Shown here one piece after another: positions 8,291-10,285 of a stretch of DNA of 64,000 nt. This DNA comes from Paraphysomonas bandaiensis (Eukaryota > Protista > Chrysophyceae), in assembly GCA_965644295.1 (NCBI GenBank), contig CBFFRP010000080.1:186001-250000 (forward strand). Reading direction: 5' to 3'. Each line of letters starts with the position of its first letter. The stretch's first letter is position 1. The notes below the pieces were generated by a model. The model ran no database searches. It was not told the origin of the DNA and saw only the letters and a program-made list of their open reading frames with translations. Both the position numbers and the translations under genes were made by a program.

Positions 8291-10285
8291 CTAAACACCA
8301 AATACTAGTACTACGTCAAACTGATTACGTGGCTCTATATTCAAACTTGTAGATTCTGAAAACGAATTGTGATGCCAATAAGATAAAGATGCAATGTCAT
8401 CAACGACAGACCCTGTCAAAGGCGATATCACCCGAGTAGTGGGCTGCCGAAACACAGTCAACATTAACGCTTTCTCATACTCAAGAACGACATCAGAAGG
8501 CGACGCACATGATGAAAATCGAAAGCACACCAGTCGCAAACTATCCTCCAATGACAAAACTCCGCTGACAATAGCAGCTGCATACTCTCCTAGACTGTGA
8601 CCCATCACTGCAGCTGGGCGAATACCCCGTGACAACCATACCTGACTCAGACAATACTCAAGAGCCACTAGTATAGGCTGAGAGTACGCAGTCTCCGAAA
8701 GGTACTCCGCTGCACTAACCTCAGTCAATCCGCCACAGATTCCAGGATACAATAACTCAGATGCACCTACACCCAAATGGGATCGGAGAATATCATCACA
8801 CCGACTCATAGCGTCACGAAATGTGGACTCCGATTCATACATATCGCGCAATACGCCAACACTGAGAGTCCCCTGTCCAGCAAATTGCCACACCATACCC
8901 GCTATACATGTCTCTGATGTCGTATCTGATGCGAATTGGCTGCTAGAAATAATACCAGGTGATCGGGAGTGAGAGACAGGAGCTTCCTCCAATATCACAT
9001 GAGATATTGTGCCGCTATAACCAAATGAACTCACTCCAGCTAACAAAGGACGATCCCCATGTCGAACCAATGGTGTAGGTTCCGTGGGAAACGAAATTGG
9101 ACTGCCTGATACAGATGCTGCCACCTTCGAGTTCAACTCACGCAGCTGGGCATTTGGAGGAGCTTGCTTATAATGAAGTGCCAATATCGCCGATAATATA
9201 CCTCCTATACCTGCTGCTGCCTCCATGTGACCGATATTCGCCTTCACACCAGAAACATACAATGTATTCTCTTCACTCCGCCCATGACCATATACCGACG
9301 ATAAAGCCTCCGTCTCAATAGGATCACCTAGTTTCGTCCCAGTCCCGTGAGCCTCAATAAGAGATACATCACCAGCATCCACACCAGCATCTGATAATGC
9401 CGCACGAAGAAGCTGCTCCTGGGCAAGACCATTGGGGGCTGTCAAACTAGCACTCTTACCGTCCTGCATCACTGCTGACCCTCGTACAACTGCATATATA
9501 CCATCATTATCTCGTTCTGCATCACTCAATCGTTTCAACACTAAGGCACCACATCCCTCAGCTCTGCAGTATCCGTTGGCGGATTCATCAAAGGTGTGAC
9601 ACTTTCCATCTGGTGATGTCATGCCGGCAACGGCACAGAGTACGGACGTTTTCAGTCCAATAGTATTAGATCCTGCAACCACCGCGGCGGTACAGTCCCC
9701 TCGGGCCAAACTGGCACAGGCATAATGCAAGGCAACAGAAACAGATGAACACGCCGTGTCAATCGTACAGCATGGCCCTTGTAACCCAAAACAATAGGAA
9801 ATTTTACCGGCACATGCAGATAATGAATTACTAGCGACATCGTACACTGATATGCTATCTGATACTTCAGAAAACCCAGAAATCACACTCGACTCCGTCG
9901 CTCCCATCATGCCAACAAAAACTCCTATATTTTCACCTTTCAGTTCTGAGATATCGTAGCCAGCATCTCGCAGTGCTTCGTGAGTACACTCCAAAAGCAA
10001 TCGTTGGCTCGGATCCATACAAGATGCCTCTGCATCAGAAATGCCAAACAGTGACGCATCGAAACTCTCCAGGACATCATCAGACAAGAAGCCACCATAT
10101 CGCGTACGCTCTAAAATGCTTGGGTCATTCCAGGAACTATGAGCCACCAATGAATCTACATCCCACCGATCCAGTGAAACAGTGCTTGTCATATCACGGC
10201 CCTCACATAACATACTCCACATTGATTCCAAATTATTAACATTACCAGGAAGACGGCAACTTACTCCAACGATGGCAACATTGCC
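8291..10285 (-). other. Module 5, first half: KS plus internally deleted AT
   Basis: KS intact. AT is identical to the others up to SLRLVC (about 8525), then jumps to a divergent YEK...SYW segment; IRGRLMQ...RAFH is missing. Confidence 0.85.

What the first reader, a model, noticed from the sequence alone, without database searches (positions are those of the whole stretch)
8291..8530. Split module: PKS-B starts where PKS-A stops, at the AT C-terminus
Seen: PKS-A ends ...SYW...FDVVLVFGV*, resembling the AT end ...SYWLKH...DCVFVEMG. PKS-B begins (VLLYE)MDGYLFPKGKGVL...ISAKD...KFYKSYK...IDRLIQ, which lines up with the internal post-AT text VFVEMGADSTLSRMGKQLM...VSGKD...CHRLLQ, and then runs DH-KR-ACP. 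Known: KS//DH split modules are typical of bacterial trans-AT PKSs and unusual in cis-AT systems. Inference: fission of one ancestral gene, with the AT vestige and the unique PKS-B N-terminus acting as a non-canonical docking interface. A trans-spliced message is a remote alternative: a GT lies at 8298/8296 and an AG 14 nt upstream of the PKS-B ATG.
Basis: partly seen in the sequence, partly recalled or inferred. Interest (0 to 1): 0.85.

Follow-up and report, generated by a model that had tools for sequence, protein, structure and literature searches.

The report
Split module between two protist PKS genes
In a marine protist, two separately encoded giant polyketide synthases appear to share one module, the first ending in a crippled acyltransferase stump and the second starting at the next domain; this break point is usual in bacterial trans-AT systems and I found no description of it in a eukaryote.

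Summary
The core observation holds. PKS-A (window 30163->8291, minus strand, 7290 aa) ends in KS, a KS-AT linker and a truncated AT. PKS-B (61216->39230, minus strand) begins with 46 unique residues, then DH-like, KR and ACP domains.

RNA contigs from a culture and from a polyA metatranscriptome run unbroken across the AT stump, the tail and the stop codon. The stop is therefore in the mRNA. Misassembly and splicing out of the tail are unlikely.

- PKS-B lies 31 kb upstream of PKS-A, so the gene order is B then A.
- The last AT does not simply stop. It has lost 86 residues, covering the small subdomain and the catalytic His motif. Only residues 7223-7263 of the tail are significantly AT-like; the last 27 are not.
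- PKS-B residues 1-46 show no significant similarity to post-AT linkers.
- PKS-B continues past its ORF stop into thioesterase-like exons. PKS-A has none.

Best reading: one two-subunit, nine-module assembly line split inside module 5, with the module-5 ACP loaded in trans. Docking got only weak support (0.39 against a best control of 0.17). PKS-B's 5' end was not tested with reads.

Other notes of this scan describe the same AT stump and the sister gene PKS-C.

The parts
8291..30163 (-). PKS-A ORF, 7290 aa: GNAT-ACP | KS-AT-KR-ACP | KS-AT-DH-KR-ACP | KS-DH-KR-ACP (no AT) | KS-AT-DH-KR-ACP | KS-linker-AT' (truncated), then stop
   Evidence: GNAT loader matched to CurA, GphF and 7UCI
9143..10279 (-). 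KS of module 5 (aa 6629-7007), with the DTACSS, HGTGT and NIGH motifs intact
8894..9142 (-). KS-AT linker (flanking subdomain), aa 7008-7090, about 99% identical to the sister modules
8526..8893 (-). N-terminal 123 residues of AT5 (aa 7091-7213), including GHSLGE. It is 97.6-99.5% identical to the sister ATs. Contigs of intact ATs leave the window sequence at 8525/8526.
   Evidence: loose ends at 8526
8375..8525 (-). Old, diverged AT remnant (aa 7214-7263). The Arg of CxR is kept. There are 86 residues missing relative to intact ATs (small subdomain plus the AFHS His motif). The rest is about 40% identical to the AT C-terminal part, up to SYW.
   Evidence: z = 12.5
8294..8374 (-). Last 27 residues of PKS-A (HHNSF...VLVFGV). 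They sit where the AT end would be, but no similarity is significant.
8291..8293 (-). Stop codon of PKS-A, present in RNA contigs from two independent sources
   Evidence: X3 record 22 and X10 record 11
7198..7320 (-). 123-nt GT..AG intron in the region downstream of the PKS-A stop (3' UTR)
   Evidence: joint 7195/7319 (cut +2); (no ORF of note downstream)
39230..61216 (-). PKS-B main ORF, 7328 aa: 46-aa N-terminus, DH-like-KR-ACP | 3 x KS-AT-DH-like-KR-ACP | KS-AT-DH-like-ACP
61079..61216 (-). PKS-B residues 1-46. They are unique: not similar to any post-AT linker, and no database relative covers them.
60182..61078 (-). DH-like domain of module 5 (aa 47-345), at most 31% identical to every other DH of the three genes. 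Tyr replaces the catalytic His of HxxxGxxxxP; DxxxH is kept.
58484..59521 (-). KR (aa 566-752, Tyr and the GGLGGLG motif present) and ACP (aa 847-911, DSL serine) of module 5
38226..39198 (-). Thioesterase-like exons after PKS-B, separated by short GT..AG introns of about 50 nt. They carry a GYSLG motif. A paralogous set of exons follows PKS-C, and none follows PKS-A.
   Evidence: tblastx 1.4e-23; PF00975 E = 0.0021; E = 0.0049 for the PKS-C copy

Best explanation
PKS-A and PKS-B are two separately transcribed subunits of one nine-module, cis-AT-type assembly line.

PKS-A starts the chain with a CurA-type GNAT loader. It carries out four full extensions and holds the fifth KS. PKS-B supplies the DH-like, KR and ACP domains of module 5, four more modules and, through downstream exons, a thioesterase-like release domain.

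The break lies at the end of a vestigial AT. That AT keeps its KS-AT linker, the active-site Ser and the Arg, and most of the large subdomain. It has lost the small subdomain and the catalytic His, so it cannot load extender units. The module-5 ACP must therefore be malonylated in trans by a sister AT or a free AT. The three fully AT-less modules of PKS-A and PKS-C need the same service.

The sharp change at 8525/8526, from about 99% to about 40% identity, marks the end of a gene-conversion tract at the deletion. It is not a rearrangement joint. The tail is an old AT remnant kept in frame.

Shown: the architecture, the truncation, the transcription, and the retained stop codon.

Inferred: that the two proteins dock non-covalently (the AT stump and KS with the PKS-B N-terminus and DH), that loading is in trans, and that the pair arose by fission plus rearrangement.
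For: - Domain maps.
- No other PKS fragment in 134 kb around the genes.
- The tail and the PKS-B head are each single copy in the assembly.
- RNA: X3 record 22 runs 8533->7321, is spliced, and continues to 6734. X10 record 11, from a polyA metatranscriptome, runs 8201-9618 unbroken across the identity boundary and the stop. X3 is truly RNA, because it carries GT..AG joints.
- Contigs of intact ATs diverge exactly at 8526 and read IRGRLMQES.
- The tail is significantly AT-like and in frame for 75 codons.
- KS5 has its Cys-His-His motifs, and the module-5 KR and ACP motifs are intact.
- PKS-A has a GNAT loader and no TE. PKS-B has no loader and is followed by TE-like exons.
- AT-less modules already exist in PKS-A and PKS-C. 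A separate AT-like ORF lies on C218.
- Complex prediction gave weak support: 0.39 against a best control of 0.17. The runs agree in at least 45% of contacts and the partner pLDDT is 61-62. That mark was reached by 51 of 78 solved complexes and 2 of 108 mismatched pairs, but passes at 0.60 or under are more often wrong than right.
Against: - The gene order is B then A, with 9 kb between them, so a simple fission is excluded.
- PKS-B residues 1-46 and the last 27 residues of PKS-A have no significant similarity to anything.
- The docking support is weak and no interface was returned.
- PKS-B's 5' end and its expression were not tested with reads. A pyrimidine-rich AG lies 14 nt before the ATG, so an extra 5' exon cannot be excluded.
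- The module-5 DH-like domain lacks the catalytic His.
- No orthologue from another species was found to show that the split is conserved.
- Contig C544 shows a different junction, 8 nt away in the same AT.
Confidence: 0.6

Rival explanations
1. PKS-A and PKS-B are independent leftovers of duplicated and rearranged copies of a PKS-C-like gene and do not work together. PKS-A would be a five-KS line that stalls or is off-loaded by another enzyme. PKS-B would be an N-terminally truncated line that is idle or primed in some other way. The tail would be decaying sequence, not a docking element.
For: - The gene order B then A suggests a rearrangement.
- PKS-C is a complete single-gene paralogue with the same loader and TE-like exons.
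- The last 27 residues of PKS-A and the first 46 of PKS-B have no recognisable homology.
- The module-5 AT and DH-like domains both lack catalytic residues.
- Docking support is only weak.
Against: - Both ORFs are open over about 7300 codons.
- The PKS-A tail is transcribed in a culture and in the sea.
- The tail stays in the AT frame for 75 codons despite about 60% residue divergence.
- The two genes are exactly complementary: loader without TE, and TE without loader; KS-AT' at one end and DH-KR-ACP at the other.
- The KS5, KR5 and ACP5 motifs are intact.
Confidence: 0.22
2. The module is not split at the protein level. The two messages would be joined by trans-splicing, or an unseen exon would put KS-AT onto PKS-B or DH-KR-ACP onto PKS-A.
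For: - These genes do have introns: the TE-like exons after PKS-B, and a 123-nt intron after the PKS-A stop.
- A GT lies near the PKS-A stop, and an AG after a pyrimidine-rich stretch lies 14 nt before the PKS-B ATG.
Against: - RNA contigs from two sources are colinear with the genome from 8533 (X3) and 9618 (X10) through the stop into the 3' UTR, with no joint in the tail.
- No PKS-like coding fragment lies outside the three ORFs in C80:176001-310000 at tblastn E <= 1.
- The AG before the PKS-B ATG (CGACAAG) fits the RNA-supported acceptors (TTGTAG, TATGTAG, TTCAG) poorly.
Confidence: 0.05
3. The junction is an assembly artefact within near-identical 5-kb repeats, and the true gene continues from AT5 into a DH.
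For: - Modules are 95-100% identical over kilobases.
- Two small leftover contigs carry other repeat junctions. C544 joins the M5-like KS-AT' in frame to a DH, 8 nt from the tail boundary.
Against: - Independent contigs bridge the boundary: X10 record 11 (8201-9618), X3 record 22 (to 8533) and the DNA run X1 record 7 (8148-8548). Organism C carries the tail with no differences.
- The sequence past the boundary is still AT-homologous and in frame. A chimeric join would not give that.
- C544 has a 1-nt indel, and its junction occurs nowhere else in the assembly.
Confidence: 0.03

Closest known systems
KS//DH split modules of bacterial trans-AT PKSs with a dehydratase docking (DHD) domain, e.g. 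gladiolin GbnD4-GbnD5 (review PMC9113145)
   Same: The subunit break lies inside a module. The upstream protein ends after a KS, and the downstream protein starts with a DH followed by KR and ACP. The ACP of the split module must be loaded in trans.
   Different: Here the upstream protein keeps the KS-AT linker (flanking subdomain) and about 200 residues of an AT remnant, whereas DHD junctions lack the flanking subdomain (PMC9113145). The downstream DH carries a 46-residue N-terminal extension, whereas none is found at DHD junctions. The other modules have integrated ATs. The host is a eukaryote, with separate nuclear genes and introns.
Class 1 and class 2 docking domains of cis-AT PKSs (ACP//KS junctions; PMC9113145)
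   Same: The assembly line is cis-AT-type and divided over more than one polypeptide.
   Different: Those junctions lie between modules (ACP then KS) and use helical bundles. This junction lies inside a module, after an AT stump. No such helical docking element was identified.
PKS-C of the same contig (C80:261361-299163, plus TE-like exons)
   Same: It has the same GNAT loader (78% identical) and a first KS that is 100% identical. Its ATs are 94-96% identical. It also has AT-less modules, DH-like domains with Tyr for His, and TE-like exons after short introns.
   Different: All eight modules are in one ORF with no intramodular break. None of its DHs is close to the PKS-B head DH (at most 31% identity).
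Myxalamid PKS, one module encoded on two genes (mxaB1/mxaB2), recalled from memory and not checked here
   Same: A cis-AT line with one module divided over two proteins.
   Different: It is bacterial. I could not verify the position of its break or any AT decay with the papers at hand (one search gave no usable text).

Membership tests
Modular type I PKS (cis-AT type) | KS with the Cys-His-His catalytic motifs | tested here: met
   KS5 has DTACSS, HGTGT and NIGH; Pfam KS hits at E about 1e-71
Modular type I PKS (cis-AT type) | An AT integrated in each module | tested here: inconclusive
   13 modules of PKS-A, B and C carry a full AT. Three have none (A-M3, C-M4, C-M7) and A-M5 has a stump.
Modular type I PKS (cis-AT type) | An ACP with a phosphopantetheine serine in every module | tested here: met
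   PP-binding hits in all modules; the module-5 ACP on PKS-B has GLDSLG
Active malonyl-CoA:ACP acyltransferase domain (AT5) | GHSxG serine and the carboxylate-binding Arg | tested here: met
   GHSLGE and C-F-R are aligned to C-I-R of the intact ATs
Active malonyl-CoA:ACP acyltransferase domain (AT5) | Catalytic His of the xAFHS motif and the small ferredoxin-like subdomain | tested here: not met
   The 86-residue gap spans GRLMQ...SRAFHSPLM; Pfam covers only positions 1-116 of 319
trans-AT PKS KS//DH junction with a DHD docking domain | C-terminal KS without a flanking subdomain, followed by a disordered DHD region | tested here: not met
   PKS-A keeps the KS C-terminal extension and linker (PF16197 hit) plus an AT stump of about 200 aa. 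The criterion is from PMC9113145.
trans-AT PKS KS//DH junction with a DHD docking domain | Downstream DH without an added N-terminal region | tested here: not met
   46 unique residues precede the DH homology in PKS-B
trans-AT PKS | A free-standing AT gene encoded with the PKS genes | tested here: not met
   There is no AT hit outside the three PKS ORFs on C80:176001-310000. One AT-like ORF lies on another contig, C218.
Active PKS dehydratase (head of PKS-B) | His of HxxxGxxxxP and Asp of DxxxQ/H | tested here: not met
   Tyr occupies the His position (DYTINNSNYFP). IDALLH keeps the Asp and the His.
Physical A-B complex | The two termini bind each other | tested here: inconclusive
   Complex prediction gave weak support: 0.39 against a best control of 0.17

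The most novel reading that the evidence does not exclude
The large-subdomain stump of a dead AT, still attached to KS5, together with the 46-residue N-terminus of PKS-B, forms a new kind of intramodular docking interface. On this reading the locus is a living intermediate in which a cis-AT line is turning into a split-module, trans-loaded line, in a eukaryote and independently of the bacterial trans-AT PKSs.
Probability: 0.25. Interest if true: 0.7.

Novelty: new variant of a known kind. Interest (0 to 1): 0.5.

Why it matters
According to the review I read (PMC9113145), intramodular subunit breaks characterise bacterial trans-AT PKSs, and cis-AT junctions lie mainly between modules.

Here the ATs are otherwise integrated. 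Even so, the same locus shows three things together:
- full AT loss in three modules;
- an AT reduced to a non-catalytic stump;
- a subunit break at exactly that stump.

This is a natural series for asking how AT loss, trans-loading and module splitting are linked. It also offers a candidate docking pair that might be portable for engineering.

I found no report of a multi-subunit assembly line with an intramodular junction in a eukaryote, where each subunit needs its own promoter and the subunits must find each other in the cytosol.

Tried and rejected
- tblastn of PKS-A, B and C against the window and against C80:176001-310000, with the three ORFs masked, gave no PKS-like exon. Hidden exons are rejected.
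- blastn and tblastx among the flanks found only short dispersed repeats. The one exception is the TE-like exons shared by the regions after PKS-B and PKS-C. No large segmental duplication explains the B-then-A order.
- The search for homologous proteins with PKS-B residues 1-560 found nothing. That search sees only proteins of 308-980 aa.
- The exhaustive representative search found at best 25% identity over the whole match, and nothing covers residues 1-35. No orthologue with an unsplit module could be fetched.
- MAFFT placed the last 27 residues on the DH start. That placement is also not significant.
- The PDB search of the largest TE-like exon gave only E = 0.95 to a thioesterase, so the TE assignment rests on weak Pfam hits and motifs. 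They were searched exon by exon, and the joined step was left out.
- The complex prediction gave only weak support, which I do not use as evidence of binding.
- The literature searches turned up no report of a eukaryotic split module.

Full report
**Setting.** The window is C80:186001-250000 of a 62.5-Mb, 669-contig assembly. Earlier notes of this scan describe the organism as a marine, colourless stramenopile flagellate. I did not verify that identity.

Two very long ORFs lie on the minus strand:
- PKS-A: 30163->8291, 7290 aa.
- PKS-B: 61216->39230, 7328 aa.

A third gene, PKS-C, lies just beyond the window on the plus strand (C80:261361-299163, 12601 aa).

On the chromosome PKS-B is the upstream gene, and 9 kb separate the two ORFs.

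**Architecture.** These maps come from Pfam scans on overlapping pieces and from internal BLAST.
- PKS-A: GNAT-ACP | KS-AT-KR-ACP | KS-AT-DH-KR-ACP | KS-DH-KR-ACP (no AT) | KS-AT-DH-KR-ACP | KS-linker-AT'.
- PKS-B: a 46-residue N-terminus, then DH-like-KR-ACP | three KS-AT-DH-like-KR-ACP modules | KS-AT-DH-like-ACP.
- PKS-C: the same loader and eight modules, two of them AT-less.

The PKS-A N-terminus matches the solved GNAT loading domains of CurA (E = 1.6e-21), GphF and 7UCI.

Just after the stops of PKS-B and PKS-C lie paralogous coding pieces (tblastx 1.4e-23). They change frame across GT..AG gaps of about 50 nt and carry a GYSLG motif. They give weak Thioesterase hits: PF00975 at E = 0.0021 and E = 0.0049. 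Nothing of this kind follows PKS-A.

They were searched exon by exon, so the TE call is probable and not proven.

In short, PKS-A has a start and no release domain. PKS-B has no start and does have a probable release domain.

**The PKS-A end.**
- From residue 7000 to 7213 PKS-A is 95-99.5% identical to every other KS-end, linker and AT N-terminus in the three genes.
- The nucleotide boundary is 8525/8526. Contigs of the intact ATs, in three runs, leave the window sequence there and read IRGRLMQES (loose ends).
- Past the boundary the tail still follows the AT. C-F-R aligns with C-I-R, so the Arg is kept.
- Next, 86 residues are absent (GRLMQ...SRAFHSPLM). By the known FabD/AT fold this is the small subdomain plus the catalytic His.
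- Then residues 7223-7263 align with the AT C-terminal part up to SYW at about 40% identity. The score has z = 12.5 and none of 2000 shuffles reaches it.
- The last 27 residues end about where the VFVEMG strand would be. Their similarity to it, or to a DH start, is not above chance.

I read the sharp identity boundary as the end of gene-conversion tracts at the deletion. The tail would then be an old AT remnant that has stayed in frame for 75 codons. This reading is an inference.

AT5 keeps the Ser and the Arg but lacks the His, so it should be catalytically dead. That follows from the established Ser-His dyad of this family.

**The PKS-B start.**
- Similarity to other DHs begins at residue 47, with the pre-DH K-[RF]-Y motif that AT-less modules also carry, and at IDRLIQ.
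- This DH is at most 31% identical to every other DH of the three genes.
- Tyr stands in the place of the catalytic His, as in the other PKS-B-type DHs. DxxxH is kept.
- The KR and ACP motifs of module 5 are intact.
- Residues 1-57, plus the five upstream codons, show no significant similarity to any of the eight distinct post-AT linkers (z <= 1.75). The length, however, is that of such a linker.
- No database protein covers residues 1-35, and the best relative is 25% identical.

**Is it real?**
- The tail and the PKS-B head are each single copy in the assembly.
- No PKS-like fragment lies outside the three ORFs in 134 kb.
- Reads were laid on 4000-9900. Run X3 is truly RNA, since it carries GT..AG joints of 45-50 nt in the neighbouring WD40 gene.
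- X3 record 22 runs 8533->7321, skips a 123-nt GT..AG intron (7198-7320), and goes on to 6734.
- X10 record 11, from a polyA metatranscriptome, runs 8201-9618 without a gap. It crosses the identity boundary and the stop codon, with 11 differences, none of them in the stop.
- DNA contigs of two organism labels also carry the tail.

So the stop is in the mRNA, the tail is not spliced away, and the junction is not an assembly chimera. Contigs cannot show transcript ends or rare isoforms.

**How it most likely works.** PKS-A and PKS-B form one nine-module line that is broken inside module 5. KS5 on PKS-A must condense onto the ACP carried by PKS-B. That ACP must be loaded in trans, as in the three AT-less modules. 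All ATs are at least 94% identical and carry an xAFHS motif of the malonyl type. A further AT-like ORF exists on C218.

Contact between the subunits is inferred. The complex test of PKS-A 6629-7290 with PKS-B 1-330 gave weak support: a median of 0.39 against a best control of 0.17. The runs agree in at least 45% of contacts and the partner pLDDT is 61-62. The mark was reached by 51 of 78 solved complexes and 2 of 108 mismatches, but passes at 0.60 or under are more often wrong than right. No interface was returned.

**Comparison with known systems.** The review PMC9113145 states three things:
- cis-AT junctions are predominantly intermodular;
- split modules (KS/DH, KS/KR, DH/KR) belong to trans-AT PKSs;
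- at KS//DH junctions a disordered DHD region follows a KS that lacks the flanking subdomain, and the DH has no N-terminal addition.

This locus works like such a junction but fails those membership features. It keeps the flanking subdomain and an AT stump, the DH has a 46-residue extension, and no free AT gene lies in the cluster. It is therefore a new variant, not a member of that family. I found no paper describing an intramodular split in a eukaryotic PKS.

**Open points.**
- Contig C544 (4248 bp) joins an M5-like KS-AT' (99.5% identical) in frame to the DH of module 2, at window position 8533/8534. That is 8 nt from the tail boundary. It would fit the novel joint of a tandem duplication of the block from DH2 to AT5', or it could be a chimeric contig. 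It has a 1-nt indel and occurs nowhere else. It does not affect the tail itself.
- The origin of the B-then-A order is unexplained.

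Noticed in passing
window 6803-6907 (-): A U6 spliceosomal RNA gene (Rfam RF00026, 68.9 bits) lies 1.4 kb downstream of the PKS-A stop. It explains the roughly 10,000-fold contig depth at 6561-6954, and why the RNA contig from the PKS-A 3' UTR leaves the window sequence at 6734.
   Followed up: yes
L009 (G000:C544:1-4248), junction at 2706: This small leftover contig joins an M5-like KS-linker-AT' (99.5% identical to window 8533-10074) in frame to the DH-KR-ACP-KS of PKS-A modules 2-3 (99.96% identical). 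It may be the joint of a tandem duplication of about 13.4 kb inside PKS-A, or a chimeric contig. It has a 1-nt indel.
   Followed up: partly
L008 (G000:C595:1-5052): This leftover contig is a circular permutation of one roughly 5-kb PKS-C repeat unit (99.9% identical to C80:279173-285833). The module copy number in PKS-C may be uncertain in the assembly.
   Followed up: no
window 38226-39198 (-) and C80:299222-299753 (+): Thioesterase-like exons separated by introns of about 50 nt follow the ORF stops of PKS-B and PKS-C. The ORF ends of those two genes are therefore not their protein ends.
   Followed up: partly
window 17890-18045 region (A-M3); PKS-C modules 4 and 7: Three modules have no AT at all. 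The KS and about 60 residues of linker run straight into the pre-DH motif.
   Followed up: partly
all AT domains of PKS-A, B and C: The ATs are 94-98% identical across the three genes. The DHs are at most 47% identical between genes, and the KSs of different module groups 65-90%. This points to strong concerted evolution limited to certain segments.
   Followed up: partly
window about 3100-5962 (+): A WD40-repeat gene converges on the PKS-A 3' end. It has three RNA-supported GT..AG introns of 45-50 nt.
   Followed up: partly
PKS-B DH-like domains and PKS-C modules 4-7: Tyr, or another residue, replaces the catalytic His of HxxxGxxxxP in the PKS-B-type DH-like domains. The PKS-A-type DHs and PKS-C modules 2, 3 and 8 keep the His.
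   Followed up: partly
window 7198-7320 (-): A spliced 123-nt intron lies about 970 nt downstream of the PKS-A stop codon, in what is otherwise a non-coding 3' region.
   Followed up: partly
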